Shown piece after piece: positions 24,603 to 44,564 of a DNA stretch of 64,000 bases. The notes below the pieces were generated by a model, which did no database searches, had not been told where the DNA came from, and was given only the letters and a program-made list of their open reading frames with translations. The stretch is from positions 62,001-126,000 of the IMG/VR virus record IMGVR_UViG_3300032331_003609; one strand, written 5' to 3'. Numbering within the stretch: the first letter of the stretch is position 1; every line of letters starts with the position of its first letter. The position numbers were made by a program, and so were the translations under genes.

Positions 24603-24605
24603 GAA

Positions 24606-28390: not shown

Positions 28391-28394
28391 ATAT

Positions 28395-28698: not shown

Positions 28699-28780
28699 GG
28701 CCCCCTGTTGTAATTGGTAGCCAATTCAGATTTAGGATCTGATGTCGCAAGACGTGTCGGTTCGAGTCCGACGGGGGTCA
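28699..28780 (+). tRNA. tRNA-Leu (TAG)
   Basis: TCAGA-TTTAGGA-TCTGA, variable arm TGTC-GCAA-GACG, TTCGAGT. Confidence 0.92.
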
Positions 28781-28852
28781 CAACAAGATTAGGTACAAAA
28801 AGATATTAAGAAACTAAACCTAAAAACGATATATAATATTCAACTAAACAAA

Positions 28853-28936
28853 ATGAGAAACCAGAATCAATATAATTATTACCCAATGCCTGAACAAGGT
28901 AATGAGGGAAATTATATGGACACAGATCTGGGATAA
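28853..28936 (+). CDS. Leader peptide 2 MRNQNQYNYYPMPEQGNEGNYMDTDLG (putative attenuator)
   Basis: 27-codon ORF after GATATATA (28828-28835) and before terminator. Confidence 0.75.
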   Translation: MRNQNQYNYYPMPEQGNEGNYMDTDLG

Positions 28937-28956
28937 CATTTTTTAAATATATTTTG

Positions 28957-28989
28957 AAAACCCAGATCTCAATAAGGTCTGGGTTTTTT
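28957..28989 (+). terminator. Intrinsic terminator/attenuator upstream of tRNA operon 2
   Basis: CCCAGATC-TCAATAA-GGTCTGGG stem plus T6. Confidence 0.85.
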
Positions 28990-28993
28990 ATTT

Positions 28994-29066
28994 GGGGATG
29001 TAGCTCCAGCGGTAGAGCGCGTGACTGTTAATCACTAGGTCGTAAGTTCGAATCTTACCATCCCCT
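28994..29066 (+). tRNA. tRNA-Asn (GTT)
   Basis: GGGGATG/CATCCCC, CTGTTAA loop, TTCGAAT. Confidence 0.93.
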
Positions 29067-29071
29067 CAGAT

Positions 29072-29145
29072 TGCAAGATAGTTCATTTGGTGAGAACACT
29101 GGATTCATAACCCAGAGGTGATGAGTTCGAATCTCATTCTTGCGA
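29072..29145 (+). tRNA. tRNA-Met (CAT), probably elongator
   Basis: TGCAAGA/TCTTGCG, TTCATAA loop, TTCGAAT. Confidence 0.85.
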
Positions 29146-29150
29146 CAAAT

Positions 29151-29222
29151 GCTCCCGTCGACTAGCGGTTAGGTCACCTCCCTTTCACGGAGGTAGCACG
29201 GATTCGAATTCCGTCGGGAGTA
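29151..29222 (+). tRNA. tRNA-Glu (TTC)
   Basis: CCTCC-CTTTCAC-GGAGG. Confidence 0.92.
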
Positions 29223-29227
29223 CAAAT

Positions 29228-29308
29228 TGGGATATCGCATAGTGGCAATTGCGGCTGACTGTAAATCAGCTCTCTTTGAGTTCGGCGGTTCGAGTCCGTC
29301 TATCCCAA
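29228..29308 (+). tRNA. tRNA-Tyr (GTA)
   Basis: GCTGA-CTGTAAA-TCAGC, long variable arm, TTCGAGT. Confidence 0.93.
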
Positions 29309-29314
29309 CAATAC

Positions 29315-29439
29315 GAGTTAACTGTCCAGTGAGGGAACTGGGGCCTGCCGGTAAATCAGGCGTCGCAAGATCAAGGTTAGTAAGTGATTCTGATACCTGC
29401 AGTACAACAGATCACGTGGTTCGAATCCCCCTTAACTCA
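29315..29439 (+). ncRNA. Enlarged tRNA-like element, anticodon ambiguous
   Basis: GAGTTAA/TTAACTC acceptor, GGTTCGAATCC T-loop, extra hairpins. Confidence 0.5.
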
Positions 29440-29502
29440 CTAAATCAGAAGCGGTAAAAAAGCGTGATATATAGGATAAATTAATCACGAATATAGCAAT
29501 CA

Positions 29503-29673
29503 ATGAAAATTGCTGACATTAAAACACATTTAAAAGGGAAAGGCCAGTATAAAGCCGAAATGATTCTAAGCGAAAAATTTGAGGGAGAAAATGTTTTTAC
29601 GAATGACAATGTCTCTATTCAACCCCAAAAATGGTTGTTATACACTATCACTTTAAAGGAGGATATTAAATAA
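29503..29673 (+). CDS. Hypothetical protein (56 aa, MKIADIKTHLKG...)
   Basis: Hand-found ORF after GATATATA at 29466. Confidence 0.55.
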   Translation: MKIADIKTHLKGKGQYKAEMILSEKFEGENVFTNDNVSIQPQKWLLYTITLKEDIK

Positions 29674-29712
29674 CTAATCAACTGAATTAATCTATATTCA
29701 TTTTATGCTCAT

Positions 29713-30879
29713 ATGAAAATTGATTTTTGGTATAGCAATATTATTCCAAAATCCGGAATTCAGGATCTACTTGAAGAAATAGACGAGGATGTTTTATTTA
29801 AGAATATTGATACTGATACAGTAAATACTAATAAATTAAATTTTTTAGTCTTTACGTGGGAAACAAAATGGGCATTTTCCAACACCTACTATACACATTC
29901 CGACGAGTTTATAAGATTACTATCAAGACTTCAGGATAAAGATTTTTATTTTATAGCAGATTTTTCTGGAGAAGCTCACACACGTCCTGACGAAAATAGT
30001 TTATTGTTCCTAAATAAATTAAGGGATAATAAGATCAATATAAATCGGATAATTGTTGCAAACAATGATTCTTCCAAAATAGGAATTAATAAAATAAGAT
30101 ATGAATCATTTATACTTAACACGTGCTTTTTTCCTAATTTCTTTTTGTCAACATGTAATCATCTGGATAATATCCTAGGTAACCAGCAAATAAAAAATTC
30201 TATAATACCTGATAAAAAATTCTTATGTCTCAATCGTAGAATGTTCCATCATAAGTACAAAGTTATAGAGGAATTATTCCATAGAGGATTATTAGAAGAT
30301 ACTAGATTTAGCTGGGTAGATAATAAGGATAAAAAAAATCTATTCAATAAAAATCTGAACTCATATTTAGGGATAGACATAAATAATTTTAAATCAATTC
30401 AATTAGAAGGTGATGTAATGTATGGTAGCGATTTATCAAGACATGAAGAATATCTTTATACTGTAAATCCTGATTGGTATTATAAGAGTAAAGTTAATAT
30501 TATCACTGAAACAATATTGGAGGGAAAAGAAATTCACATAACAGAAAAAACGTGGAAGGCAATTTATTTAGGAATTCCTTTTGTGATTTATGCATCAAAG
30601 AATCATCTTAAGATCCTAAGAGAAATGGGGTTTAAGACATTTAACACATTGATCAACGAAGATTATGATGAAATGATTGGAGATGCTAAACTAAAACAGA
30701 TTATAGATAGTGCTGAAGAATTAGCTAGAATTTATAATACCCCAGAAGTTTTAGAGATATGCAGATTTAATCAGAAAATTTATTCAGATAAAATACATCG
30801 TAAGAATATTTGTAAAAATTCTTTTTTGAATAGGATAGTTGATATTAAAAATAATACTATTAAATTAAAGATCTTTTAA
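29713..30879 (+). CDS. Single-domain paralogue of the 1770..4265 repeat (GT10-like ET..TEK motif)
   Basis: KFLCLNRR, SKVNIITET..IHITEKTWKAI..GIPFVI. Confidence 0.55.
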   Translation: MKIDFWYSNIIPKSGIQDLLEEIDEDVLFKNIDTDTVNTNKLNFLVFTWETKWAFSNTYYTHSDEFIRLLSRLQDKDFYFIADFSGEAHTRPDENSLLFLNKLRDNKININRIIVANNDSSKIGINKIRYESFILNTCFFPNFFLSTCNHLDNILGNQQIKNSIIPDKKFLCLNRRMFHHKYKVIEELFHRGLLEDTRFSWVDNKDKKNLFNKNLNSYLGIDINNFKSIQLEGDVMYGSDLSRHEEYLYTVNPDWYYKSKVNIITETILEGKEIHITEKTWKAIYLGIPFVIYASKNHLKILREMGFKTFNTLINEDYDEMIGDAKLKQIIDSAEELARIYNTPEVLEICRFNQKIYSDKIHRKNICKNSFLNRIVDIKNNTIKLKIF

Positions 30880-31489
30880 CTATAGGTTTGGTGTATCTAG
30901 TTTTGAAAATTTCAGCCAATTCGCTGTGTCCAACCTCACCATAATGTCCATCATCAACTTCACCTTCAGATTCTTCTGAAACTGTTAGGCATCTTATAAA
31001 TTCACATTTTGTTATAGCTCCTCCAAAAGGTGTCCAATGAATTATGTCATTATTAGGAAGAGCCTTGTTTATTAATCTTATCCAAGAATCCACTTCGTGT
31101 GCAAATTTATACGAAGATCTATTTAACATTATTTCGTCTATTGATTGCTTAGATAAATGATTGAAAAGAGAAAGATCATAATCATCACCAGGTCTTAGAC
31201 TAACCCATGTATCGTTTTTTGTCGTTAGTCTAAATCTAACTGGATTTGACCATCCGATTATAACAAAGTCATTTTCTTTTATTTCCCAGATATTTTTACA
31301 GATGTTTTCGAAAATAGCATAATTATCAGAGCCTCCTTCCCCTATATTCTTTTTAATGAAACTAAGATCCCTAGATAGAATATCAGAAAAGTTAAGAGGT
31401 TTATAACCCTTCCATTCTATGTATTTTTTTGCCCAGTGTCCAAATCCCTCTGTGTATGAGTCACCAAATGTCCAAAGTGTGTTCGCCAT
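30860..31489 (-). CDS. SGNH/GDSL hydrolase-like protein
   Basis: LWTFGDSYT, GSDN, DGHY; start moved to MANTLW. Confidence 0.7.
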   Translation of the reverse strand: MANTLWTFGDSYTEGFGHWAKKYIEWKGYKPLNFSDILSRDLSFIKKNIGEGGSDNYAIFENICKNIWEIKENDFVIIGWSNPVRFRLTTKNDTWVSLRPGDDYDLSLFNHLSKQSIDEIMLNRSSYKFAHEVDSWIRLINKALPNNDIIHWTPFGGAITKCEFIRCLTVSEESEGEVDDGHYGEVGHSELAEIFKTRYTKPIVKRSLI

Positions 31490-31558
31490 GTTGATAATAT
31501 ATACTATAGAAGTTAAAACTAAAATATTCCAACTATCATATATAAAATAAAACCCCGC

Positions 31559-32335
31559 ATGTTTAAATATCTTACAAGGGAGGAAGTTCAACAGCTTTCT
31601 TTCGATTGGAAATATAAAGGATACTCCGTAATAGATCTAATCACATCAGAAGAGGCTGATTTAATATCAGAAGATCTTGATAATCTAAGAAAAAGAAGAA
31701 ATTCAGTAGATGATAAGTACGGGGAGTATGATCCTTATATCCATCCTCACAAAGAATCAGAGATGGTTGAAAAAATTCTTGTACACCCTAAGATAGTGGA
31801 AGCCATGGAATTTATAATAAATTCTGAGATTCAAGGAATACAAACGTGGGCTTATTTTAAACCTCCGGGTGAACTTGGTAGAGACGCACACCAAGATGCT
31901 TTCTATGCTCAAACCCAATGGAATAAGACTGCTAATGTTAGTATATCTCTGGACGATACTGATGAGTCAAATGGAGGTATTTGGTTTTATGAGGCTTCTC
32001 ATTTACTTCCAATTCTACCTATAGGGATAGACGAGGAAAGAGCTAAGCTTAATCCTATTAGATGGAGAAACGAGAGAGGTAAGGCATGTGTTATGCCTGA
32101 AGGACATAATTTTACTAGAATAACCCCATCGATCAGAAAGGGACAAGCAGTTTTCCTGCATTCACATATAGTTCATGGATCTAATGAGAATAAAAGCGAT
32201 CGTTTCAGAAGATCTATTCTGAGCGGATATACAGGCAAAGGATCTCCATTCAGAAGCGGAGAACATATGAAAAGGGAACCAATTGACATTTATGAACTAA
32301 AATTAAAATACTGGGAGGTAAAAAAACTCCAATAG
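31559..32335 (+). CDS. Phytanoyl-CoA dioxygenase (PhyH)-like 2OG-Fe(II) oxygenase
   Basis: AHQD, LDD.DESNGG, HSHIVHGS..N.S..FRR. Confidence 0.85.
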   Translation: MFKYLTREEVQQLSFDWKYKGYSVIDLITSEEADLISEDLDNLRKRRNSVDDKYGEYDPYIHPHKESEMVEKILVHPKIVEAMEFIINSEIQGIQTWAYFKPPGELGRDAHQDAFYAQTQWNKTANVSISLDDTDESNGGIWFYEASHLLPILPIGIDEERAKLNPIRWRNERGKACVMPEGHNFTRITPSIRKGQAVFLHSHIVHGSNENKSDRFRRSILSGYTGKGSPFRSGEHMKREPIDIYELKLKYWEVKKLQ

Positions 32336-32342
32336 ATTTTGA

Positions 32343-33554
32343 ATGAAGCTAATACACACATTTGTTCCGAATAAGTTTGATCTAAAAAACGAGAAGGATA
32401 AAAACATAATCTGGAAGGATTTAATGTATGTCCAGATGCTTAGTGTTTTGCTTGCTAATAGGGAATATGGAGGTATTTCATTGTACACCAACAACACAAT
32501 AAAAAAACAAATATTAGATATAGGTGTTCCCTATTCTGACATAGACACTGACATATTACAAGACACCACATCAGATCTATTTTGTATACCTAAACTCAGG
32601 ATTTATAGAGAAATAAAAGAACCTTTTGTACATATTGATACAGATACTCTTATCTATAATAAGATAGATTTTTCAAAATTTGATTCGTCCGTAGTTTATT
32701 CACATTCGGATATTAGACCTCCGTTACATAAAAATGGCGACGATAAACTCTATGAGATCTTTAATAATTATCCATCCCTAGGAGATTCAGATTCGTTCTT
32801 TAAATCTGCTAAAATAACATACCTAGATCTGTTTAATAGATTGAATAATGATCATTCAGAATTTAAATTAAACAACATAAGGGTAGGTGATATACCTAAT
32901 ATGAATATTATAATTGTTAATGACCATGACAATTTTAATAAGGCATCTCAAATGTCCCTGGATCATTATATAAGAAATAAGGAAGTTATAGACAGCACTA
33001 AAAATGGGGAATGTTACATAGAGCAGCTAATGATACACCTGAATATGATGGAGATTAGCGAAAAGTATAGGGAAGAAGTTATAGCAAAAAAGACCTTCAT
33101 TCTTAAAGATTCACCATTTATGCTAGATGCTGATTTTGGGTCTCATTTAGATGATTTAAAATTTCCATTCACCATGATACACAATTCTCATAAAGATGTA
33201 GAAATAGATGAAACAATTCATATTAATGGAGTATTATATTCAAGGGCTCAAGAATATCACGAGCATTACGGTAGAACGACTAAGGTAAATTCGATGGAAG
33301 ACATTATAAAATTATTTGATTTTGATTTTTATGGTCTTTCCCACCTAACATTCTATAAATGGTCTGAATTTTTTCAAGCAATTGTAATAGGATATATTGT
33401 AAAAAACTTCGGAGAAGAATATGTTAGAAGTGTTTACGAATATTATAAAACAATTTATCCTGTAGTTTATAGTTTTCCTAGATTATCAAAAGGAGAAACA
33501 TTATACCAGGATCTAACAGGATTTAAATTTGAAAAGATAAAAAGCTTGGTCTGA
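32343..33554 (+). CDS. Hypothetical protein, glycosyltransferase-like (DxD)
   Basis: PKL.IY...EPFVHIDTD. Confidence 0.5.
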   Translation: MKLIHTFVPNKFDLKNEKDKNIIWKDLMYVQMLSVLLANREYGGISLYTNNTIKKQILDIGVPYSDIDTDILQDTTSDLFCIPKLRIYREIKEPFVHIDTDTLIYNKIDFSKFDSSVVYSHSDIRPPLHKNGDDKLYEIFNNYPSLGDSDSFFKSAKITYLDLFNRLNNDHSEFKLNNIRVGDIPNMNIIIVNDHDNFNKASQMSLDHYIRNKEVIDSTKNGECYIEQLMIHLNMMEISEKYREEVIAKKTFILKDSPFMLDADFGSHLDDLKFPFTMIHNSHKDVEIDETIHINGVLYSRAQEYHEHYGRTTKVNSMEDIIKLFDFDFYGLSHLTFYKWSEFFQAIVIGYIVKNFGEEYVRSVYEYYKTIYPVVYSFPRLSKGETLYQDLTGFKFEKIKSLV

Positions 33555-33562
33555 ACAAAAAA

Positions 33563-33635
33563 GCGGGAGTAGCTCATTTGGTAGAGCGATAGCCTTCCAA
33601 GCTATAGGTGGCCAGTTCGAGCCTGGTCTCCCGCT
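33563..33635 (+). tRNA. tRNA-Gly (TCC)
   Basis: GCGGGAG/CTCCCGC, U73, ATAGC-CTTCCAA-GCTAT. Confidence 0.95.
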
Positions 33636-33698
33636 CCGCCCTAAACCAGAATATGTCTAATAAACTATTCTGGTTTATTATTATAAAATAGGTTTAGC

Positions 33699-36534: not shown

Positions 36535-37143
36535 TTATTTTGAATGCATTTTTTTATCCGAGCATTTAATTTCAGATTTTTCCCATTCAACTAAAGGTCT
36601 TTCATTAGGAAAAGAAAAACATCTCCACTTCTTTTGTTTTTCGAAATAAATATGCTCTTTTAATATGGAGGGAATAGCAGCATTTGTCTCAACTCTTTTT
36701 GCTGGATTATCAAAAATTAAATCGATTATAACAGTAATACTTTCAGTATCATCCCATTTACGAATTTGTTCTTCAAGAAGTCTCCATTCTCCCCTATTTA
36801 GGTATTGGTTTTGTAATATACTATTTAAGTATGAAAAAGTTTGTCTAAGATTTTCCATATTATCAGAGAACGTTGCAGCAGGAGCTCCGTGACCTTTGTC
36901 ATAAACATTTGATCTATAGTCATCCTCGTCTGATGTTTTAATATTTGGCTCTTTATAGAAATCCATCGATCCTCTATTCACATTTGTTGGTCTATTAGTA
37001 GATCTATACTTGATCCATACTGGTTGTTCTAATTTTTGGGAATAAAGAATTTCAAAAACTTGATTCTTTACTCTAACTGTATCCTCTGCATTAACACCTA
37101 TTGATAGTGTTATAATTAATAATAATGCTAGAATTTTTTTCAT
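36535..37143 (-). CDS. DNA/RNA non-specific endonuclease (His-Me finger) with signal peptide
   Basis: MKKILALLLIITLSIGVNA signal; YDKGHGAPAA, N..LQ...LNRG.W..LE. Confidence 0.88.
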   Translation of the reverse strand: MKKILALLLIITLSIGVNAEDTVRVKNQVFEILYSQKLEQPVWIKYRSTNRPTNVNRGSMDFYKEPNIKTSDEDDYRSNVYDKGHGAPAATFSDNMENLRQTFSYLNSILQNQYLNRGEWRLLEEQIRKWDDTESITVIIDLIFDNPAKRVETNAAIPSILKEHIYFEKQKKWRCFSFPNERPLVEWEKSEIKCSDKKMHSK

Positions 37144-38762
37144 CTGTTTAATTTTAATTTATTAACCGGAACATTTACATGTTTACCGAATGGCATCTTA
37201 TGACTAGTAGTCATTGCCCATATCATCTTTCTGTGCCATTTTGGTTTCTCTGGATCTTCTGCCCCTCCGTCAGTGAAGTAAATCATGCAAGCTAAATCTT
37301 TACCTTTTTTGATTAGATTTTCTTCTACCCACTTAATAGGAGGATCGAATCCACCTCCGTTACCCCCAGTAGACATTTGTTTAGATTTATCTAATGGCTG
37401 AGCTGCAGATGCTAATCTATCAATTCCTCCAGAAGGAGGTTCCATACCATCGCTGCAGTAAATGATGTATATCTCTTTTGGCTGGAACGTCTTTAATACA
37501 CTTCTAGATTCTGCTAAGAAAGTATTATATTCATCCTGACCTATACTTCCTGACGTATCAACTGCAATAACTACAGTTCCGAATCCCTCTTCCTTTCCCT
37601 TTAATCCCGGAAGATATATGTCTCTTGATGCATATCTTCTATTAGGTATCTTATACATAGTAGGATCATCATCAGATTCAGATACGTATCTTTGTAAAAT
37701 TTTTCTCCAATCAACCTGTGGGTTTACTAAGTCCTCTATGAATTTCCTAAGAGCCGGAGAAACCCCTCCGCCACCTGTTCCTTTATTGGCTGCTCTTTCT
37801 GTTATCTCCTGTATTTTCTTAGAAATGTCTTTTTTATCTACTGGTTCTTTCTTCTCTATTTTCTCGTCCCAGTCTTTTTTATCCTTGTCTTCACCTTCAT
37901 CACTCCACTCTTCACCAGGTTCTCCCTCTTCGTCAGATAGCTCACCGTCTTCTCCTTCACCATCTCCAGGTTCACCATCTTCACCCTCACCATCTCCGGG
38001 TTCGCCATCTCCAGGTTCGCCATCCCCAGGTTCGCCATCTTCACTCTCACCATCTCCAGGTTCACCGTCTTTACCGTCTCCCTCTTCATCAGATGGCTCA
38101 CCGTCTTCCCCTTTGTCATCTTCTTTACCGTCTTCCTTCTTTTTGTCAAATTCTTTTTTGTCTAATTCTTGATCTTCACCCCTTACAGAATCAAGTTCTC
38201 CCATTATTGTTTCCGATGTTTTTTCTGTGTTTATTTCACCAGGTTCTAAAACATCACAATATGATTTATATGAGCTGTCTCCTCCTGATTTTTCTAATTC
38301 AGAATATATTTCTTCTGCAGATTTTCCTTCAAATTTAGGATCTTTGTATTTAATAGGAAGTATAGATTTTCCTATTCCTTCTAAATATGGCTCAGCTGCT
38401 ATATCGCATGCTTGATTCCATATAGATTGATCCTTATCTTGTTTTCTATCAAAGTGCTGTAGTGCAAGATGTATAATCCCCTGGTTAATTGCCCAGATGA
38501 CTTCATCATCACTCATTTCTAGTACATTTTCTGGATTAAATATAAAAACAGTTCCATCAGTTGAAAAGAATTTGCATTCTTTAGAAACTGCTACTGGAAT
38601 TTCTGATAGTACATTTCCAAAAAATCCTCCTTTCATTAAGATTTTAGAAATACACCTTTTCACCTTCATGATGGATTTTTCGTAATCCTCCTGTGTCATT
38701 CCATAATTGGAAAAGTTTTCCTTTAATAATTGATACTCTTTAAAATTTCTTAGTCTTCTCAT
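37140..38762 (-). CDS. VWA-domain partner of MoxR ATPase (degenerate N-terminal metallopeptidase-like domain, acidic linker, C-terminal VWA)
   Basis: FSTDGT, N.ACDIA, DGEPG repeats, VVIAVDTSGSI, MIYFTDG. Confidence 0.85.
   Translation of the reverse strand: MRRLRNFKEYQLLKENFSNYGMTQEDYEKSIMKVKRCISKILMKGGFFGNVLSEIPVAVSKECKFFSTDGTVFIFNPENVLEMSDDEVIWAINQGIIHLALQHFDRKQDKDQSIWNQACDIAAEPYLEGIGKSILPIKYKDPKFEGKSAEEIYSELEKSGGDSSYKSYCDVLEPGEINTEKTSETIMGELDSVRGEDQELDKKEFDKKKEDGKEDDKGEDGEPSDEEGDGKDGEPGDGESEDGEPGDGEPGDGEPGDGEGEDGEPGDGEGEDGELSDEEGEPGEEWSDEGEDKDKKDWDEKIEKKEPVDKKDISKKIQEITERAANKGTGGGGVSPALRKFIEDLVNPQVDWRKILQRYVSESDDDPTMYKIPNRRYASRDIYLPGLKGKEEGFGTVVIAVDTSGSIGQDEYNTFLAESRSVLKTFQPKEIYIIYCSDGMEPPSGGIDRLASAAQPLDKSKQMSTGGNGGGFDPPIKWVEENLIKKGKDLACMIYFTDGGAEDPEKPKWHRKMIWAMTTSHKMPFGKHVNVPVNKLKLNR
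37900..38115 (-). repeat. Low-complexity (DGEPG)n coding repeat
   Basis: About 15-nt tandem units inside the VWA gene. Confidence 0.8.
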
Positions 38763-38763
38763 A

Positions 38764-40254
38764 TTAGATTTCTTTCATGAAACCCTTATATTTAGTAACA
38801 AAAGGTGTTACATATTGTTCAAGAGAAGTATCTCCTAAATAGTTTTTAACTTCTGGATGTGTTCTCTTAATCATATTTAATCCGCTCATTGCAATTTCTC
38901 CAGAGTTTAAATTTGTTAGATAAGTGATGAAATTGGTAAATTCATCTTTGCTTAACTGCTGTCCCGAATTATATTTAGAAATCATATACATAACAGCATA
39001 AGATTTTCTTAGGTCATATTTGCCAGAGGAAGACATTGGTAATTGTATAGTTGGATCTGTCGGATCAGAAAACACTTTAGTGATTCTATTAATAGGCCAA
39101 ACCTTAGTTGTCTCTAAGAAGTCTGTGATAACTGAAGATACTTTTTTTCCAAGATGCTTATTGAATATCTTAGATATTTCCAATTCACTTAATTGAGTAC
39201 CGTTTGTCTCTGCTTCTTCTTTTCTGTCCTGATATTCTCTAGCTGCATAATCCCATGCTCTAGGTGTAACACCCATTGTTGTATCATAGGATGATAAAGA
39301 TCCTGGCATCATATAGAAATACTCCTGCATTAAATCAACAAATGAAACCACATCATCGCTTAATCCTTTTTTTCTTGCCCAGCCTGTCCAACTCGAAGGA
39401 TCAGATATAAGATTTACCTGTGCAAATCTATTAGCAAGTGCAAAACTCATTGGTCTAATTAATCCTCCTGGTTCATCTTCTGGTCTATTTGCAGCAGCAA
39501 GAATTAACCATTTGCTAGGTATCTTATAATTAGCACCTGCGATTTCTCTGTCTAGTACAACTTTAAGCATTGCAGCTTGAACCGACGGATGAGCTCTGTT
39601 GATCTCATCTAGGAATATAATTCCGCCTTTATCATCTGGACCATTATCTAATGGCCATATCATAGGAAGGTAATTTACAGATCTTTTAACATCACCATAT
39701 TTTTTATCAGCTTCTGCTCCAGGTAGACCTGCAACGTCAGTTGGCTCCATCAGACTAAGAATAACCTCTATTACAGGAACACCCATATCTTCAAGACCAA
39801 ATGACTTTACTATCGAGGTTTTTCCTATTCCAGGAGCACCCCAAATTAAAAGGGGTCTTCCAGATTCTGGGTTTTTAAAATGATATGTTAACTCCTTTTT
39901 AAGTTCAGGTGCGCTGACATCATCTATTTCTGGATCTTGTGTCTTTTGTGCAATCTTCCAAGCTGGATCTGATTCGCTCATTTCGTTTTCAAATTTTCTT
40001 GTGAATTTATAATCGCTTCCTTTTGCTCCTTCAGGAAGATGTATCTTTATGAATGGCTCTGGTGATGCCTTGTCATCAAAGCTTTCCGATTCAGGATTAT
40101 ACTTCTTATCCCTAACAGGAATTTCATTCTTATCCTGAGCTTTTACTAAATTCATTAGCCAATTTCCAGCTTTTCTAGCAATATCAACCCCTTTCGAAAA
40201 AAGATTAGCCTCATTTACCGAGTTGAATGTTTTAAAGTTCTGTATTCTTTTCAT
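38764..40254 (-). CDS. MoxR-family AAA+ ATPase
   Basis: WGAPGIGKT, IIFLDEINRA, AAANR, ALANRF. Confidence 0.92.
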   Translation of the reverse strand: MKRIQNFKTFNSVNEANLFSKGVDIARKAGNWLMNLVKAQDKNEIPVRDKKYNPESESFDDKASPEPFIKIHLPEGAKGSDYKFTRKFENEMSESDPAWKIAQKTQDPEIDDVSAPELKKELTYHFKNPESGRPLLIWGAPGIGKTSIVKSFGLEDMGVPVIEVILSLMEPTDVAGLPGAEADKKYGDVKRSVNYLPMIWPLDNGPDDKGGIIFLDEINRAHPSVQAAMLKVVLDREIAGANYKIPSKWLILAAANRPEDEPGGLIRPMSFALANRFAQVNLISDPSSWTGWARKKGLSDDVVSFVDLMQEYFYMMPGSLSSYDTTMGVTPRAWDYAAREYQDRKEEAETNGTQLSELEISKIFNKHLGKKVSSVITDFLETTKVWPINRITKVFSDPTDPTIQLPMSSSGKYDLRKSYAVMYMISKYNSGQQLSKDEFTNFITYLTNLNSGEIAMSGLNMIKRTHPEVKNYLGDTSLEQYVTPFVTKYKGFMKEI

Positions 40255-40266
40255 TTATTATTTTTA

Positions 40267-41082
40267 TTAATCTTCAAAAAATCCTGCTGATTTTAGATCA
40301 CTAAGATTGTCTATTGTTTTTGCAACCTCTTCGGTTCCAGTTTCTTTTGCTAGTGATGATATTTTTTCAAATGTTCCTTCTGAGAAGTTTAGTTCTACAA
40401 ATCCTGAAGGATTTTTTGTGAACATCTTTAGTAGAAGCTCTGTAGAATCATAATTTTTAGCTATTTCTTGATCCTCAAACTTTAATCCAATATCTTCAGA
40501 GCTTGCTGCAAATAATTCTTTAATAAGTTTAGCAGCTTCCTCTATTCCACCAAATGCCAAATATGTTAGGGTTTTATTGGAGGAAAATCCATTTCCTATT
40601 TTTCTTCCCTTAATATCGTCAATATTCTCTTCGTCCCATCCTTCTTTTTTCATTAACTCCTCTAGAATTAATGCGTTTCCTGATTTAAAGTAATATCCTG
40701 CGTTTTGCCCAAATCCAGGGACTTTAGCAGTTATTGATGCTACACCTGTTGCTGCACCTGTAGTAAATTCGTCTCCGCCATTCATTACTATAATTCCATC
40801 ATTTGCTGGGGATTTTGTATATCTCATATGCCCTGATACCCCATATTTAGCTCCCATCATATATGGGCTTTTCATTAATTCATTTGTTTCTACAGTTGCA
40901 GGTACAACCAAATAACCAGCTACGCCAGCATTACTTCTTTGCGAAGGCAATAATAGTTTAGAATTCGGGATGTCAGTATCTACAGATTTAAAATTCTTAT
41001 CTACTGGGACAAATACAAATGCACTTAATGATCCAAATGCACCCTCATTTAAAAATCCTTTAAAATTTAAAACTTTTCCCAT
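40267..41082 (-). CDS. Hypothetical protein with capsid-targeting-like N-terminus (MGKVLNFKGFLNE)
   Basis: Start placed 5 nt after GATATATA (41088-41095, minus strand). Confidence 0.65.
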   Translation of the reverse strand: MGKVLNFKGFLNEGAFGSLSAFVFVPVDKNFKSVDTDIPNSKLLLPSQRSNAGVAGYLVVPATVETNELMKSPYMMGAKYGVSGHMRYTKSPANDGIIVMNGGDEFTTGAATGVASITAKVPGFGQNAGYYFKSGNALILEELMKKEGWDEENIDDIKGRKIGNGFSSNKTLTYLAFGGIEEAAKLIKELFAASSEDIGLKFEDQEIAKNYDSTELLLKMFTKNPSGFVELNFSEGTFEKISSLAKETGTEEVAKTIDNLSDLKSAGFFED

Positions 41083-41165
41083 TTGTTTATATATCAAAAA
41101 ATAAATGCCTGATGTTTGAAATATTTCTTCCTTTTTGGGATAGAAATACAAGATAAAACACCATA

Positions 41166-41945
41166 ATGAAGGCTTTCGGAAAATTTAACACCGCTATTGA
41201 TTGGACAAAAGATAAAATGAATGACTTCTGCTATGAGGTTCACACAGAAAAATGGCAAGGTAAGGATATAAAAAATGACGATAAATTCGCCATGATTGAG
41301 ATCCTAAATCATTCATTTACATGCACTATGGTAGAAGATATTCCGGAATTAGTGGAGCAGATTAAGCCTAACCTACCATGGGCAGATGATCATTTTGAAG
41401 AAAGGGTCAGCGGCAAACCATTAAATCCTCCTCCATCTCACAATTGGTGGCCATTTGCTCAAAAGAATAATGCAGAATTTGGGGGAACAACTAAATTTTC
41501 CCATACCTACCCCGAAAGAATGTGGCCAAAGTATGCTAATGATGCAGAAATACCTCACGAGGGAATAAGATTTAATTACGGCGATTTTGATGATGTTATA
41601 GATTTATTGACCAAAGAACCTTTTACCAGGCAGGCATTTTTACCTATTTGGTTTCCTGAAGATACCGGAGGGGCAAACGGAGAAAGAGTCCCGTGTACAA
41701 TTGGCTATCATTTTATCAGAAGACATAACTATCTCCACATTGTTTACTATATTAGATCTTGCGATTTCTTTAGACATTTTAGAGACGACATCTATTTAGC
41801 ATGTAGGAAGGTTATTTGGCTTCTTGAAAGATTAAGAGAGAAAGATCCAGATTCTTGGAATGACGTGAAGCCTGGTATGTATACGATGCATATAACATCA
41901 TTACATGCATTTAAGCACGAAAAATTCTTATTGAAGAAAAAGTAA
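41166..41945 (+). CDS. Thymidylate synthase-family enzyme, likely dCMP-modifying
   Basis: TRQA, VPCT, YIRSCD..HFRDDIY. Confidence 0.85.
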   Translation: MKAFGKFNTAIDWTKDKMNDFCYEVHTEKWQGKDIKNDDKFAMIEILNHSFTCTMVEDIPELVEQIKPNLPWADDHFEERVSGKPLNPPPSHNWWPFAQKNNAEFGGTTKFSHTYPERMWPKYANDAEIPHEGIRFNYGDFDDVIDLLTKEPFTRQAFLPIWFPEDTGGANGERVPCTIGYHFIRRHNYLHIVYYIRSCDFFRHFRDDIYLACRKVIWLLERLREKDPDSWNDVKPGMYTMHITSLHAFKHEKFLLKKK

Positions 41946-42000
41946 AACATTTTTATCTGTCGAATAATCTTTTTATATTTACGTCTAAACTTTAAAATAA

Positions 42001-42252
42001 ATGGCCGATTTTTGTAACAAATGCGCTGAAGAAATGGGATTTCCAACCCCTGATATTGATGTGTATAAAATATTTGATTCTTTACAACCTGGATTTTTTG
42101 AAAACCATATTTGTGAAGGATGCGGATTTGTTGGAATAGCAAAGAGCGAAAATGATGAGCTATTTGTGATACACCAAAACGGAGATGGTGAATCAGTTTT
42201 TTACAACTATGAAAAATATGAGGGATTAAAAACAGACGACAATGAACGATAG
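42001..42252 (+). CDS. Hypothetical Zn-finger-like protein
   Basis: CNKC ... CEGC. Confidence 0.6.
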   Translation: MADFCNKCAEEMGFPTPDIDVYKIFDSLQPGFFENHICEGCGFVGIAKSENDELFVIHQNGDGESVFYNYEKYEGLKTDDNER

Positions 42253-42787
42253 CCCATCATACCTTAGAGCATCATTAAAGACTAACAAGCCTCTCGTATA
42301 TGTTGACATGGACGGGGTGTTATGTGACTTTGATAAAAGACATGAAGAATTGATGTCCAAAGGAATAAATCAATTCCAAGCATTTAATCACGCATTTGCT
42401 TTTAAGGATTTAGATCCAATACCAGGAGCAATAGAAGCCTGGCAATCTTTACAAGAAAAATATGATACCTATATTCTTTCTACTGCTATGTGGTCTAATA
42501 CGTATGCATGGACAGATAAAAGAATATGGGTTCAAAAGTACTTAGGAAAAAGTGCAAACAAAAAACTAATACTATCGCACAATAAAGGATTATTAAGAGG
42601 CGATTATTTAATAGATGATAGAATTGCTAACGGTGTAGCGGATTTCGAGGGTGAACATATACATTTTGGAACTGAAAAATTTCCATCATGGAAACAGGTT
42701 TTAGACTATTTACTAACCACAGAGGAAAAAGAGAATGAAGAAAATCAAAACGATGATATGGCACAGAATAAAGCGTTATCTAAGTAA
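42242..42787 (+). CDS. 5'(3')-deoxyribonucleotidase (NT5C, HAD)
   Basis: YVDMDGVLCDF, K.LL.GDYLIDD. Confidence 0.9.
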   Translation: MNDSPSYLRASLKTNKPLVYVDMDGVLCDFDKRHEELMSKGINQFQAFNHAFAFKDLDPIPGAIEAWQSLQEKYDTYILSTAMWSNTYAWTDKRIWVQKYLGKSANKKLILSHNKGLLRGDYLIDDRIANGVADFEGEHIHFGTEKFPSWKQVLDYLLTTEEKENEENQNDDMAQNKALSK

Positions 42788-43160
42788 GAGAAGAAAATTT
42801 GAATTTAGAAAAGCTATTTCCGGTTTAAAAGAGAACCAATCTAAAATAGTAGACATAGCAAATTATTTAATGTCCAACAAAGGATCTAAATTAGTTTATT
42901 CGGCTATTTCAGAAACTTTCTTCATAGAGTATAAGGATGTAATTTGCCGAATAGAGAGTGATAGAATTATTATAACCAACGGATTATATTCATACGATAT
43001 TTCAATACCACATGCTATAACACTTGATTTAACTAAAAGATTTTTAAACCATTTGGAGTCAAGAAAAAGAGCAGTAGAGAGAAAAATAAATCTAAAATTG
43101 ACATCCTCTTTAGGGAAAGTACATCAACAAATAATTTCCGTGTCTGAGTCTGGTATTTAA
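42735..43160 (+). CDS. Hypothetical protein
   Basis: ORF in operon context. Confidence 0.6.
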   Translation: MKKIKTMIWHRIKRYLSKRRKFEFRKAISGLKENQSKIVDIANYLMSNKGSKLVYSAISETFFIEYKDVICRIESDRIIITNGLYSYDISIPHAITLDLTKRFLNHLESRKRAVERKINLKLTSSLGKVHQQIISVSESGI

Positions 43161-43169
43161 AAAAATATA

Positions 43170-43862
43170 TTATGTTGGCTGTGGAGGCATTGATCTTATA
43201 AATTCTGCCCAGCTTTCATCTCCGGTTGAAGCAATTCTAGGATCCATCATTTTTTCTGCATACGATGCCTTTCCCCCCGGAATGAGCCATTCTCCAACCT
43301 TTATCATAGTTTTATATCCTCTTCTTCCTCCTGCAGTAGCAATTTTTCCAAGTGCACCAGTTGTTTTTCCGGTGGCCGAAAATTCTTTAAGGGATACTAA
43401 CATTTTATCAGTATACTTTCCAATTCCTTTGAATTTGGAAAGAAATGATGAGCTTTTGAAAAATCCAACAATTTTTGGGAAGAATTTTCCTACCAATTTA
43501 ACAACAGGTGAAAGGATCTTAGCCCCTATTTTTCCTCCTCCTCTTAAAGCCTTTATAAGAAGTGATCCCCCTGCTCCAATATATTGCCCGAATATCGGAA
43601 TAAGTCCTATTGCACATAATCCAGCAAGTAGGTATTCCCCCTGTTTAGCATAAGAAACAAGATTTATTCCTTCAAAAAATGATCCAATACCCGGTATTAA
43701 AGCTGCAAAATCGAACACCGTGTTCCACCAATGTTCAAAAAGATTCTCACTGAAATCAACAGATTCAAACATCTTAAGATTTTCTGATATCTGATCCTTG
43801 CTAAATTCAAAGCTTTCTATTAGGCCTGATCTATATTCGCTATAAGTAGACAAAAAATTCAT
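43170..43862 (-). CDS. Protein with capsid-targeting-like N-terminus and pre-toxin TG-like hydrophobic domain
   Basis: FDFAALIPGIGSFFEGIN..Y..QGEY..AGL..IGLIP.FG. Confidence 0.55.
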   Translation of the reverse strand: MNFLSTYSEYRSGLIESFEFSKDQISENLKMFESVDFSENLFEHWWNTVFDFAALIPGIGSFFEGINLVSYAKQGEYLLAGLCAIGLIPIFGQYIGAGGSLLIKALRGGGKIGAKILSPVVKLVGKFFPKIVGFFKSSSFLSKFKGIGKYTDKMLVSLKEFSATGKTTGALGKIATAGGRRGYKTMIKVGEWLIPGGKASYAEKMMDPRIASTGDESWAEFIRSMPPQPT

Positions 43863-43904
43863 ATTTTTATATATCCGCTACTGTATTTAAATATATATAA
43901 TCAG

Positions 43905-44564
43905 ATGAAAACTTTAAAGACATATAAAAACTTTCTTAACGAAGGAATTTTAGATCAGATCTTTGGCGGGGAGGTCGACCAGAAAGCAAATACTGAATTA
44001 GTTCCTCAGGAAAAAGAGGTGGCAACACAGCAATTAATAGATTTTTTAGGTAAAAAAATAGGAAATGCTGAAGATTCCCCGATTTATGTTTTTAGTCAGT
44101 CCGATTCGGTTCAAGACCTCTACATATCAGTTGAGCTTTTTAATGAAGCTAGGAGATTAGGGTTTGAGGCTGAGAAACAAGGCACTCTATACACTGCATC
44201 AGGGAGATATTCATATTCGGTTTTGGATTGTTCTTCTATGCAATCATTTGACCTAGAAGGAGTGAGATCTGGCCTTTATAACATAATAAAAAAGAACGAG
44301 TCAGGCGGGATAAAAACAATTATCGAATTTGCAAATATTTCATCGCTACAAAAAGATCAGATATCCAATATATGTGATATTATATCCTCCAGACAAATAT
44401 CTGACCATTCATTAAAATCCGGGGATTTTTTCATTTTATCCGATAATAGTAGCAATCGCAAGGGGGGAAAGGACATTTCAAATTTTATCCCATCTTTATT
44501 TCCCAAAATAGCAGTAGAAAAATTTAAACACATATTTTTAACACAGGTTAAAGATCCAGCATAG
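43905..44564 (+). CDS. Degenerate (probably inactive) MoxR-AAA paralogue with capsid-targeting-like N-terminus
   Basis: By-eye alignment to 38764..40254; Walker motifs lost. Confidence 0.55.
   Translation: MKTLKTYKNFLNEGILDQIFGGEVDQKANTELVPQEKEVATQQLIDFLGKKIGNAEDSPIYVFSQSDSVQDLYISVELFNEARRLGFEAEKQGTLYTASGRYSYSVLDCSSMQSFDLEGVRSGLYNIIKKNESGGIKTIIEFANISSLQKDQISNICDIISSRQISDHSLKSGDFFILSDNSSNRKGGKDISNFIPSLFPKIAVEKFKHIFLTQVKDPA

What the first reader, a model, noticed from the sequence alone, without database searches (positions are those of the whole stretch)
37140..44564. Block of proteins with a T4-like capsid-targeting N-terminus, including a MoxR-VWA chaperone pair
N-termini: MRRLRNFKEYQLLKE (VWA), MKRIQNFKTFNSVNE (MoxR), MGKVLNFKGFLNE, MNFLSTYSEYRSGLIE, MKTLKTYKNFLNE. 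These resemble the T4 internal-protein targeting sequence MKTYQEFIAE, which the prohead protease cleaves after Glu (established). Three of the five have the late motif directly upstream. Inference: a MoxR AAA+/VWA system and partners are packaged in the head and injected, or help build the head core.
Basis: partly seen in the sequence, partly recalled or inferred. Interest (0 to 1): 0.65.

Follow-up and report, generated by a model that had tools for sequence, protein, structure and literature searches.

The report
T4-style capsid address tags on MoxR-VWA
A 245-kb freshwater jumbo phage carries the same kind of short N-terminal tag that phage T4 uses to load proteins into its head on at least eleven late genes, including a MoxR ATPase and its VWA partner, so these proteins are probably built into the prohead core and trimmed by the head protease; this is inferred from sequence only.

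Summary
All five ORFs exist and begin as quoted. The motif is h-x-[N/T/S]-Ar-x-x-Ar…h-x-E, starting at residue 6-7, and is far commoner at N-termini than chance allows.

- The genome is an uncultured 244,850-bp phage whose capsid protein is closest to Lak megaphages and Tenacibaculum phage PTm1.
- It encodes a homologue of the T4 head protease gp21 fused to a scaffold, and a gp23-like capsid protein.
- The scaffold holds 14 repeats of Y-x-x-Y-[L/I/V]-x-E. T4's tag (YQEFIAE) and the T4 gp23 site FGSFLTE have the same spacing.
- The tag is kept in homologues of all five proteins, down to about 30% identity.
- One related lineage has lost it from MoxR and VWA together.
- A promoter-like GATATATA[A/G] motif sits before the protease-scaffold and other structural genes. 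It also sits before three transcription units here; MoxR and VWA lie inside one of them.
- The block is not unique: at least eleven genes carry the tag genome-wide.

No proteomic evidence exists. Packaging, cleavage, and the choice between injection and an assembly role are all inference. The VWA protein's peptidase motif is degenerate (QGxxH instead of HExxH). I rate this a new variant of a known kind.

The parts
37140..38762 (-). VWA partner protein, 540 aa. It has a DUF2201_N peptidase-like domain with a degenerate motif (QGIIH where HExxH is expected), a roughly 120-aa acidic Gly/Asp/Glu linker, and a DUF2201 VWA domain with a DTSGS MIDAS motif.
   Evidence: Pfam PF13203 at 99 bits and PF09967 at 40.4 bits; PHROG 1314; alignment with homologues; linker is 47% D+E.
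38718..38762 (-). Predicted propeptide of the VWA protein: MRRLRNFKEYQLLKE, followed by N.
   Evidence: These residues, through Gly21, are missing in the L007 orthologue and have no counterpart in the N4-like JA-1 homologue. L006 has MNNVKSFNQYVLILES and LR756500 has MKYIKSYENFIFEN.
38764..40254 (-). MoxR-like AAA+ ATPase, 496 aa. Walker A is GAPGIGKT and Walker B is IFLDE. It has an N-terminal extension of about 130 aa that cultured-phage homologues lack.
   Evidence: Pfam AAA_3 at 36.4 bits and AAA_5 at 36.5 bits; PHROG 1297; matches in cultured phages begin at about residue 135.
40210..40254 (-). Predicted propeptide of MoxR: MKRIQNFKTFNSVNE, followed by A.
   Evidence: 69 of 96 full-length homologues match a strict tag regex. 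The subclade P0023-P0039 lacks it.
40267..41082 (-). p271, the first gene of the operon. It has an alpha/beta domain plus a C-terminal helical bundle, with no known fold or family.
   Evidence: No Pfam, PHROG or NCBIfam hit. AF2 pLDDT 82 and pTM 0.81, with residues 1-14 disordered. No fold match. Syntenic in L006.
41044..41082 (-). Predicted propeptide of p271: MGKVLNFKGFLNE, followed by G. It has the exact T4 spacing F-x-x-F-L-x-E.
   Evidence: L5, F10 and E13 are invariant, and M1, F7 and N12 are at least 90% conserved, in 26 sequences down to 41% identity.
41086..41095 (-). GATATATAAA promoter-like motif, 4 nt before the p271 ATG. It would drive the operon p271-MoxR-VWA-endonuclease.
   Evidence: The motif is about 20-fold enriched upstream of starts and also precedes the protease-scaffold, a head-closure-like gene and a tail-fibre-like gene.
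36535..37143 (-). Endonuclease_NS with a predicted Sec signal peptide. It is the last gene of the same operon, overlaps the VWA stop by 4 nt, and has no tag.
   Evidence: Pfam PF01223 at 68 bits. Conserved after VWA in L006 and L007.
43170..43862 (-). p230, a basic protein (pI 9.5 after the predicted cut) with an invariant hydrophobic Gly-rich core at residues 43-99. It belongs to a widespread phage family of unknown function.
   Evidence: 161 homologues; invariant columns; pI and hydropathy; AF2 model is low-confidence and all-helical; Atlas gives a weak PT-TG lead only.
43815..43862 (-). Predicted propeptide of p230: MNFLSTYSEYRSGLIE, followed by S.
   Evidence: The family consensus is MNNILSIEDFLxE, followed by a second conserved QI[K/R]E-S site.
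43866..43875 (-). GATATATAAA promoter-like motif, 4 nt before the p230 ATG.
43893..43900 (+). ATATATAA promoter-like motif, 4 nt before the p219 ATG.
43905..44564 (+). p219, an acidic protein of unknown function from a small family (11 representatives among 1.84 billion proteins).
   Evidence: The Atlas gives only sub-threshold leads.
43905..43943 (+). Predicted propeptide of p219: MKTLKTYKNFLNE, followed by G. It is the closest of the five to T4's MKTYQEFIAE.
   Evidence: It is the top hit of the independent PSSM. Ten of the eleven family-sized homologues begin M-x-[N/K]-[L/I/M]-K-x-Y-x-x-F, and the eleventh starts MIFSYSQFIGE.

Best explanation
The five N-termini are capsid-targeting propeptides of the T4 type.

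Proposed mechanism:
1. Late in infection, three transcription units are expressed together with the head genes: p271-MoxR-VWA-endonuclease, p230, and p219.
2. The first 13-16 residues of each tagged protein form a short amphipathic element with aromatics at i and i+3. This element lets the protein co-assemble with the scaffold core, which is itself built of 14 repeats with the same aromatic and hydrophobic-x-Glu pattern.
3. Once the gp23-like shell has closed, the gp21-family protease, which is fused to that scaffold, cuts after the Glu of the h-x-E motif. This frees mature MoxR (about 54 kDa), VWA (about 58 kDa), p271, p230 and p219 inside the head.
4. Folded proteins of this size cannot leave through the shell, so they would stay with the DNA and be ejected into the next host. 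They may also act on the core during maturation.

What is shown: the motif, its statistics and its conservation; the protease, capsid and scaffold homology; and the link between the tag and the promoter motif.

What is inferred: binding to the core, the cleavage position, presence in virions, ejection, and what the MoxR-VWA pair actually does.

Because the peptidase motif of this VWA protein is degenerate, I expect the pair to act as an ATP-driven remodeller and adaptor, not as a protease.
For: (1) T4 logic. In T4 the tag is a 10-19 residue propeptide; residues 4 and 7 (Tyr, Phe) serve targeting and residues 8 and 10 (Ile, Glu) serve processing (PMC9026906). The T4 sequence is MKTYQEFIAE (PMC8442874). 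p271 (NFKGFLNE) and p219 (TYKNFLNE) have the same spacing, and the T4 gp23 sequence FGSFLTE-AE fits it too.

(2) Machinery is present. PF03420 (gp21 family) scores 38 bits, above its cut-off. BLASTP against T4 gp21 gives 27% identity and E = 1e-9, with the GELxHP and SSR motifs conserved. PF07068 (gp23 family) scores 127 bits. The protease is fused to a scaffold with 14 Y-x-x-Y-[LIV]-x-E repeats.

(3) Non-random position.

(4) Conservation of the tag in homologues: MoxR, p271, p230, p219 and VWA. In a phage whose capsid protein is only 44% identical (LR756500.1), both MoxR and VWA and two nearby genes downstream of VWA carry it.

(5) A natural loss experiment. The L007 lineage keeps a 71-73% identical MoxR and a 57% identical VWA, but both lack the tag, and p271 is absent. 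A second, tagged MoxR-VWA pair is present in the same contig.

(6) Timing. 8 of 11 tag candidates have ATATATA[AG] within 60 nt upstream, against 36 of 262 other genes (Fisher p = 2.9e-5). Two of the three exceptions lie inside an operon. The same motif precedes the protease-scaffold, a head-closure-like gene and a tail-fibre-like gene.

(7) The AF2 model of p271 leaves residues 1-14 disordered in front of a confident fold.

(8) Precedent. The MoxR ATPase p618 is a major virion component of Acidianus two-tailed virus and binds the VWA protein p892 (PMC4124505).

(9) One other tagged protein in the genome matches an endolysin-type PHROG. That is a typical kind of ejected cargo.
Against: There is no direct evidence. 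No virion proteome or N-terminal sequence exists for this phage or for any relative that carries the pair, and PTm1, the nearest cultured relative, lacks MoxR.

A PSSM built from the scaffold repeats does not retrieve the N-termini. The resemblance between tag and scaffold holds only in a reduced alphabet.

Three of the five tags (VWA, MoxR, p230) have 2-4 extra residues between the aromatic pair and the h-x-E, so the cleavage site is a guess.

The tag-less L007 MoxR still has GATATATAAA directly upstream, and that subclade is conserved across many contigs. The pair therefore functions without being tagged.

In cultured phages the homologous pair has no tag and lies among replication and nucleotide-metabolism genes.

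The assignment of the promoter motif as 'late' rests on three weakly annotated structural genes.

The complex prediction gave no answer and counts neither way.
Confidence: 0.62

Rival explanations
1. Assembly-only role. The tags bring MoxR-VWA and their companions into, or onto, the scaffold core, where they act as a chaperone and adaptor for building or dismantling the core of a very large head. They are then degraded or expelled and are never delivered to the next host.
For: Iyer et al. 2021 proposed a virion-assembly role for the MoxR-vWA-metallopeptidase pairs of jumbo phages (PMC7824862). ATV p618/p892 act in virion morphogenesis. The tag-less L007 pair keeps the same promoter motif, which fits a job done late in the infected cell.
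Against: The peptidase motif is degenerate here. Folded proteins of 23-58 kDa, cut once near the N-terminus, have no obvious way out of a closed shell. T4 clears its core by cutting it into small peptides (PMC5694885), and a full map of h-x-E sites within the mature bodies of these five proteins was not made. Homologues in cultured phages lie among replication genes, not morphogenesis genes.
Confidence: 0.2
2. The N-terminal motif is a real, selected peptide signal, but for something other than the prohead. It might be a shared late-protein localisation or membrane-association signal, a zymogen-type inhibitory propeptide, or a degron. On this view the likeness to T4's tag is convergent.
For: The scaffold-repeat PSSM does not find the N-termini. 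Spacing to the Glu varies. One MoxR subfamily uses a quite different conserved N-terminus, MKKLVPESIEE...SLNEG. p230 has a hydrophobic segment that suggests a membrane link.
Against: The motif co-occurs with a gp21-family protease and with scaffold repeats of the same pattern. The aromatic spacing matches T4 exactly in four proteins. The motif is tied to the promoter shared with head genes. There are no signal-peptide features.
Confidence: 0.12
3. The motif is an artefact. It reflects AT-rich codon bias at gene starts (Lys, Asn, Phe, Tyr, Ile codons), a nucleotide-level translation signal, or recent duplication of a 5' cassette.
For: The genome is 34% G+C. The promoter-like motif lies only 3-8 nt before many ATGs, so 5' ends may be under nucleotide-level constraint.
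Against: Internal Met-anchored and any-position controls from the same proteome give about 6 expected matches against 18 observed for a loose pattern, and about 0.1 against 4-7 for the strict ones. The five coding 5' ends share only 7-14 of 21 bases and use different synonymous codons. The peptide motif persists in homologues at 30-40% identity and in a 24.6% G+C genome.
Confidence: 0.04

Closest known systems
Capsid-targeting sequence of phage T4 internal proteins IPI/IPII/IPIII and Alt (Mullaney & Black 1996; reviewed in PMC9026906 and PMC3012670)
   Same: Both are short N-terminal propeptides with aromatics at i and i+3, followed by hydrophobic-x-Glu. Both occur in a phage with a gp21-family protease, a gp23-family shell and a scaffold core. 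In both, the cargoes are unrelated to each other and share only the tag, some cargo genes sit in variable loci, and the genes are late-expressed.
   Different: The tag here is 3 residues longer at the front (M-x-x-h-x-N/T-Ar...). Three of the five have extra residues before the h-x-E. Most cargoes are acidic and large (54-58 kDa enzymes), not small basic proteins. The host phage belongs to a distant lineage related to Lak megaphages and PTm1. Nothing has been shown experimentally.
MoxR AAA+ / vWA-metallopeptidase chaperone pair of group 2.2 jumbo phages (Iyer, Anantharaman, Krishnan, Burroughs, Aravind 2021, PMC7824862)
   Same: The two-gene architecture is the same: a MoxR-like ATPase followed by a protein with an N-terminal DUF2201_N peptidase-like domain, a low-complexity linker and a C-terminal VWA domain. 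A role connected with the virion was proposed for those pairs.
   Different: Neither passage that mentions MoxR or vWA in that paper describes an N-terminal targeting tag, and the paper does not contain the phrase 'capsid targeting'. Homologues in cultured phages start at about residue 135 of this MoxR. Here HExxH has become QGxxH, so the peptidolytic part of that proposal does not apply to this copy.
Acidianus two-tailed virus p618 (MoxR) and p892 (VWA) (Scheele et al. 2011; PMC4124505)
   Same: A MoxR-type ATPase that is a virion component works with a VWA partner.
   Different: That is an archaeal spindle virus with no prohead, scaffold, protease or tag. Its pair acts in extracellular tail growth. 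No homology beyond the family level was tested.
Propeptide-processed ejection proteins of phiKZ-like giant phages (SPN3US, phiKZ; PMC5694885)
   Same: Many head-internal proteins are cut after Glu in a short motif by a gp21-related protease. Paralogues share near-identical N-terminal propeptides. Large enzymes, such as the virion RNA polymerase, are packaged and ejected.
   Different: The cleavage motifs differ (A-x-E or S-x-E), the propeptides are long, and the phages belong to another lineage. No MoxR-VWA cargo is reported in the passages read.

Membership tests
T4-type capsid-targeting (CTS) propeptide | A short N-terminal segment of 10-19 residues that precedes the mature protein. | tested here: met
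   The motif lies within residues 1-16 in all five proteins. AF2 leaves residues 1-14 of p271 disordered. VWA residues 1-21 are absent from the tag-less orthologue.
T4-type capsid-targeting (CTS) propeptide | Two aromatic residues at i and i+3, the targeting determinants (T4 residues 4 and 7). | tested here: met
   F7/Y10, F7/F10, F7/F10, Y7/Y10 and Y7/F10. T4 rule from PMC9026906.
T4-type capsid-targeting (CTS) propeptide | A hydrophobic-x-Glu processing site directly after the second aromatic (T4 residues 8 and 10). | tested here: inconclusive
   The spacing is exact in p271 and p219. In VWA, MoxR and p230 the h-x-E lies 2-4 residues further on.
T4-type capsid-targeting (CTS) propeptide | The phage encodes a gp21-family prohead protease and a scaffold core. 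| tested here: met
   PF03420 at 38 bits, above its cut-off of 27. BLASTP against T4 gp21 gives E = 1e-9. A scaffold domain with 14 repeats is fused to the protease.
T4-type capsid-targeting (CTS) propeptide | Expressed together with the head genes (late). | tested here: inconclusive
   A shared GATATATA[AG] motif precedes the protease-scaffold and other structural genes. No transcript data exist; no RNA run holds the locus.
T4-type capsid-targeting (CTS) propeptide | The tag is necessary and sufficient for incorporation into proheads, and it is removed by the protease. | not testable with these tools
   This needs virion mass spectrometry or reporter fusions in a cultivated relative.
MoxR-type AAA+ ATPase | An AAA+ core matching the MoxR-type Pfam models above their curated cut-offs, with intact Walker A and B motifs. 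| tested here: met
   AAA_3 at 36.4 bits (cut-off 27) and AAA_5 at 36.5 bits (cut-off 22). GAPGIGKT and IFLDE are visible in the sequence. bpMoxR is below its cut-off.
MoxR-type AAA+ ATPase | A VWA-domain partner gene lies adjacent. | tested here: met
   The VWA gene starts 1 nt after the MoxR stop. The pairing is conserved in L006, L007, LR756500 and PBECO4.
MoxR-type AAA+ ATPase | The structural hallmarks of the clade (helix-2 insert and pre-sensor-1 hairpin). | not tested
   No model of the ATPase was built. There is no sequence match in the PDB.
DUF2201 VWA / metallopeptidase co-chaperone | DUF2201_N plus a DUF2201 VWA-like domain. | tested here: met
   99 bits and 40.4 bits, both above their cut-offs. 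The MIDAS motif DTSGS is present.
DUF2201 VWA / metallopeptidase co-chaperone | The HExxH zinc-peptidase motif. | tested here: not met
   The window protein and its L007 orthologue have QGIIH where LR756500, JA-1 and PBECO4 have HEVLH, HEAWH and HEILH. The pair-B copy in L007 keeps HELLH.
T4 internal proteins IPI-III (as a protein family) | Small, highly basic proteins homologous to IPI, IPII or IPIII. | tested here: not met
   No Pfam or PHROG match. Predicted mature pI is 4.5-5.7 for four of the five; only p230 is basic, at pI 9.5.

The most novel reading that the evidence does not exclude
A large clade of freshwater jumbo phages related to the Lak megaphages pre-loads an intact ATP-driven MoxR-VWA remodelling machine, plus a changeable set of at least ten other tagged proteins, into the capsid and injects them with the DNA. 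If so, the tag would let the whole ejected proteome of uncultured phages be read directly from sequence.
Probability: 0.3. Interest if true: 0.8.

Novelty: new variant of a known kind. Interest (0 to 1): 0.6.

Why it matters
If the tag works as it does in T4, three things follow.

1. The T4 capsid-addressing system is far older and more widespread than the Tevenvirinae. It would reach the lineage that contains the Lak megaphages.
2. Head-internal and ejected proteins of uncultured jumbo phages could be listed from sequence alone, by combining the N-terminal motif with the late promoter motif. That gives a handle on a class of proteins, including anti-defence and take-over factors, that is otherwise invisible in metagenomes.
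3. The function of the widespread phage MoxR-VWA(DUF2201) pair is unknown. Here it would be placed either inside the prohead or at the very first moment of infection. The natural tagged and untagged variants offer a ready-made comparison.

Tried and rejected
- **Scaffold-repeat PSSM.** A PSSM built from the 14 scaffold repeats and scanned over the proteome did not retrieve the N-termini. I therefore dropped the stronger claim that the tag is a copy of a scaffold repeat. Only the reduced pattern is shared.
- **Complex prediction.** A run of the scaffold repeat domain with residues 1-40 of p219 gave no answer (score 0.00). It is not evidence either way.
- **Fold searches with the p271 model.** Foldseek against PDB and BFVD, and VIA-align wide, gave no match beyond a generic helical bundle for residues 208-271.
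- **AF2 of p230.** The model was of low confidence (pLDDT 59.6), so I ran no fold search on it.
- **ESM Atlas leads.** AAA-fragment clusters for p219 and PT-TG for p230 scored below 0.9. Pfam at E <= 10 did not confirm either.
- **Other database searches.** NCBIfam, and a PDB sequence search with MoxR, gave nothing useful. Megablast of the block against GenBank phages found no match.
- **Cultured relative.** PTm1 has no MoxR homologue and a different scaffold repeat, so I did not pursue its proteomics.
- **MoxR C-terminus.** YKGFMKE-I fits the pattern, but it is equally conserved in the tag-less subclade and is Asp in some members. I take it for part of the fold, not a C-terminal propeptide.
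- **DNA-level explanations.** Duplication or codon bias was rejected.
- **Reads.** No RNA run holds the locus, and I did not use read laying.

Full report
**1. What is there**

The window is bases 62001-126000 of a single 244,850-bp virus contig. It has 34% G+C, is classed as linear, and CheckV estimates it as 86% complete. DNA nearly identical to the locus turns up mainly in freshwater and lake metagenomes.

| Name | Coordinates | Length | Identification |
|---|---|---|---|
| VWA | 37140-38762(-) | 540 aa | DUF2201_N (99 bits) plus DUF2201 VWA-like (40 bits) |
| MoxR | 38764-40254(-) | 496 aa | AAA_3 and AAA_5 above cut-off; Walker A GAPGIGKT, Walker B IFLDE |
| p271 | 40267-41082(-) | 271 aa | no family |
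| p230 | 43170-43862(-) | 230 aa | no family |
| p219 | 43905-44564(+) | 219 aa | no family |

The first three genes, plus a signal-peptide-bearing Endonuclease_NS (36535-37143), are packed with gaps of 12 nt and 1 nt and an overlap of 4 nt. They read as one operon. p230 and p219 are a divergent pair 2 kb away. Between the two groups lie untagged genes on the other strand: a thymidylate-synthase-like gene, a small Cys-rich ORF, an NT5C nucleotidase and a 141-aa ORF.

**2. Is the motif more than chance?**

Yes. Four controls agree.

- A regex for the motif gives 28 hits in 273 crude gene calls. Seven of those begin at residue 6 or 7 of a protein, and five more are in one scaffold protein.
- The strict T4 spacing Ar-x-x-Ar-[LIVM]-x-E occurs 32 times in 77,018 residues: 14 in scaffold repeats, 4 at residue 6-7 of proteins, and 14 elsewhere. 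About 0.1 would be expected at those two positions.
- A PSSM trained only on N-termini of MoxR and p271 homologues from other metagenomes puts p219 above every one of 65,552 internal windows. It recovers nine proteins outside the training families at per-window p <= 6e-4, where about 0.65 are expected.
- The coding DNA of the five N-termini is only 7-14 of 21 bases identical and uses different synonymous codons. The resemblance is therefore in the peptide, not a duplicated cassette or codon bias.

The block is the densest cluster, but it is not unique. Tag-like N-termini also occur elsewhere in the genome:

- G000 3742, 7434, 15211, 49589 and 49857.
- 165829 and 166941, directly after the capsid gene.
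- 173750.
- 244459, a second DUF2201_N gene cut by the contig end.

**3. The context that makes the T4 reading credible**

The genome encodes a gp21-family prohead protease. PF03420 scores 38 bits, above its cut-off. BLASTP against T4 gp21 gives 27% identity over 113 residues, E = 1e-9, with GELxHP and SSR conserved. There is also a gp23-family capsid protein (127 bits).

The protease is fused to a scaffold domain that contains fourteen 14-residue repeats. Their consensus is I-S-Y-S-E-Y-L-A-E-N-L-D-K-N.

In T4 the tag is MKTYQEFIAE (PMC8442874). Residues 4 and 7 matter for targeting, and residues 8 and 10 for processing (PMC9026906). All internal head proteins join the core through such a tag and are cut after Glu by gp21 (PMC5694885).

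The pattern Ar-x-x-Ar-h-x-E is thus shared by four things:

- T4's tag.
- The T4 gp23 sequence FGSFLTE-AE. From general knowledge of T4, not from a tool result here, this is the site at which gp23 is matured.
- This phage's scaffold repeats.
- The N-termini of p271 (NFKGFLNE-G) and p219 (TYKNFLNE-G).

VWA, MoxR and p230 have the aromatic pair but reach the h-x-E 2-4 residues later.

I must add a caution. A PSSM made from the scaffold repeats themselves does not pick out the N-termini. The likeness is one of pattern, not of sequence profile.

**4. Evidence from relatives**

*MoxR.* Among 96 full-length homologues down to about 30% identity, 69 match a strict tag regex. Three more match once a mis-called start is discounted. 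About 19 carry a different conserved N-terminus, MKKLVPESIEE...SLNE-G.

*Cultured-phage homologues.* N4-like phages, PBECO4-like phages and others match only from about residue 135 on. They lie among replication and nucleotide-metabolism genes.

*The other families.*
- p271: M-[KR]-[KR]-[IV]-L-x-F-x-x-F-[LI]-N-E persists down to 39% identity, and L5, F10 and E13 are invariant in the 26-sequence alignment.
- p230: MNNILSIEDFLxE, followed by a second conserved QI[K/R]E-S site.
- p219: ten of the eleven family-sized representatives among 1.84 billion proteins start M-x-[N/K]-[L/I/M]-K-x-Y-x-x-F, and the eleventh starts MIFSYSQFIGE.

*L006.* In this 255-kb relative (MoxR 59% identical) the same operon reads MERLLGFNQFINE-G, MEKIKNFGEFSEIYE-A and MNNVKSFNQYVLILE-S.

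*LR756500.1.* This 462-kb uncultured phage has a capsid protein only 44% identical. There VWA begins MKYIKSYENFIFE-N and MoxR begins MSFKNFTQYSEHISINLLAE. Two nearby genes downstream of VWA begin MKYIQTYKDFL[I/L]E, and its scaffold has degenerate repeats of the same kind.

*The natural loss experiment.* The most telling case is L007 and the subclade P0023-P0039. MoxR is 71-73% identical but starts at our residue of about 94. VWA is 57% identical but starts at our residue 22, so it lacks exactly the tag region. p271 is absent. These are at least two separate deletions. The same contig also carries a second MoxR-VWA pair in which both proteins are tagged (MRRVSNFETF... and MGKFIKYGSFKSF...INE-S) and HExxH is intact. 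The tag therefore behaves as a module that both partners gain or lose together.

**5. Timing**

An upstream motif, GATATATA[A/G], is about 20-fold enriched before starts. 44 of 273 genes have ATATATA[AG] within 60 nt upstream, out of 70 copies in the whole genome on both strands.

It precedes the protease-scaffold gene, a gene with head-closure PHROG matches (window 53599-55761) and a tail-fibre-like gene. It does not precede the UvsX-like or DnaB-like genes.

It lies 4 nt before the ATG of p271, p230 and p219. Eight of eleven tag candidates have it, against 36 of 262 other genes (p = 2.9e-5). Two of the three exceptions are MoxR and VWA, which sit inside the operon. Calling the motif 'late' is an inference from these associations.

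**6. What the cargo looks like**

- After the predicted cuts, MoxR is 54 kDa (pI 5.7) and VWA is 58 kDa (pI 4.5). VWA has a 120-residue linker that is 47% Asp+Glu.
- The MIDAS motif DTSGS is intact.
- The zinc-peptidase motif is QGIIH here and in the L007 orthologue. LR756500, JA-1 and PBECO4 have HExxH at that position. This copy is probably not a protease.
- p271 folds confidently (pLDDT 82) into an alpha/beta domain plus a helical bundle, with no detectable relative.
- p230 is basic, has an almost invariant hydrophobic Gly-rich core, and sits at a conserved position next to the UvsX/DnaB module in distant relatives.
- The p230/p219 pair is nevertheless missing from relatives whose MoxR is 93-95% identical. 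This recalls the variable internal-protein loci of T-even phages.

**7. Mechanism and its rivals**

The best reading (confidence about 0.6) is that the tags address these late proteins to the scaffold core and are removed after Glu by the gp21-like protease. The mature proteins would be left inside the head.

Whether they are then ejected to act at the start of the next infection, or do their work during core assembly and maturation, cannot be decided from sequence.

- For ejection: untagged homologues sit among early or middle replication genes. One other tagged protein looks like a cell-wall hydrolase. Folded proteins of this size have no exit from a closed shell.
- For a late, cell-internal role: the untagged L007 pair keeps the same promoter motif. 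There is also the published proposal of an assembly chaperone (PMC7824862) and the ATV precedent, where a MoxR ATPase is a major virion component that binds a VWA protein (PMC4124505).

A non-capsid signal, or a compositional artefact, is much less likely, as set out in the rival explanations.

**8. Comparison and novelty**

The tag-and-protease logic is T4's, and the MoxR-vWA-peptidase pair in jumbo phages has been described. In the literature I could search, the phrase 'capsid targeting sequence' appears in 21 papers. Going by the 18 listed titles, these concern T4, P1, P22 and phiKZ-like phages. I found no report of such tags on a MoxR-VWA pair, or of the system in the Lak/PTm1-related lineage.

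I therefore rate it a new variant of a known kind. It rests on consistent but entirely computational evidence.

Noticed in passing
window 18042-18466 and 18473-33637: A tmRNA gene (tag peptide ARQEIGASIINMAFANAPVALAA) and 13 tRNA genes, most of them in an array at 27569-29309.
   Followed up: no
window 19123-24602: Two large collagen-repeat proteins (829 and 994 aa) with C-terminal Peptidase_S74 intramolecular-chaperone domains, probably tail fibres. They account for the G+C rise to 44-49% in this stretch.
   Followed up: partly
window 36535-37143 (-): A DNA/RNA non-specific endonuclease with a predicted Sec signal peptide (MKKILALLLIITLSIGVNA). It is co-transcribed after VWA and is conserved there in L006 and L007. 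A periplasmic nuclease made late might serve superinfection exclusion or clearing of DNA from the lysate.
   Followed up: partly
window 38430-38480 region (VWA residues ~94-100): The HExxH zinc-binding motif of the DUF2201_N 'metallopeptidase' domain reads QGIIH in this protein and in its tag-less L007 orthologue. It is intact in LR756500, N4-like JA-1, PBECO4 and the second pair of L007.
   Followed up: yes
whole genome; in the window e.g. 41086-41095, 43866-43875 and 43893-43900: The promoter-like GATATATA[AG] motif ends only 3-8 nt before the ATG in about 16 genes, and 13-22 nt before it in about 18 others. The first class may give leaderless or near-leaderless mRNAs.
   Followed up: no
window 43170-44564, compared with L003, L004 and L005: The divergent p230/p219 pair is present in the 98% relative L003. 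In L004 an unrelated 275-aa gene takes its place, and in L005 nothing does. The site is an indel hotspot between the 141-aa and 80-aa genes.
   Followed up: yes
G000 161872-163953 (outside the window; L001/L002): The prohead protease is fused to the scaffold, which carries fourteen 14-residue repeats (consensus ISYSEYLAENLDKN). The 841-aa gene just upstream (159315-161840) has an internal SFGDFSKILTE-A at residue 457 and might be cut in two.
   Followed up: partly
G000 244459-244850 (contig end, outside the window): A second DUF2201_N gene, tagged MSKLVKWKDYSKIYE and truncated by the contig end. It is 36% identical to the pair-B VWA of L007. No second MoxR was found in the 86%-complete contig.
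   Followed up: partly
G000 15211-16164 (outside the window; L024): A tagged protein (MKHLKLFTPFINE-Q) matches PHROG 181 'endolysin' (E = 1e-15) but no Pfam family. It is a candidate ejected cell-wall hydrolase.
   Followed up: partly
window 38764-38790 (MoxR C-terminus): The MoxR protein ends ...KYKGFMKEI, which fits the Ar-x-x-Ar-h-x-E pattern one residue from the C-terminus. It is conserved in tagged and untagged relatives alike, and is Asp in some, so it is probably structural.
   Followed up: yes
L006 11566-13620: In the 255-kb relative the VWA gene is called as two ORFs (391 and 289 aa), split within the acidic linker. This could be a frameshift, an assembly error or a genuine split.
   Followed up: no
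window 41166-41945 (+): The thymidylate-synthase-like protein falls below the Pfam cut-off (21.3 against 24.3 bits) but matches PHROG 160 at 5e-27. It may be a dNMP hydroxymethylase-type enzyme, which would point to modified DNA. An NT5C nucleotidase lies next to it.
   Followed up: no
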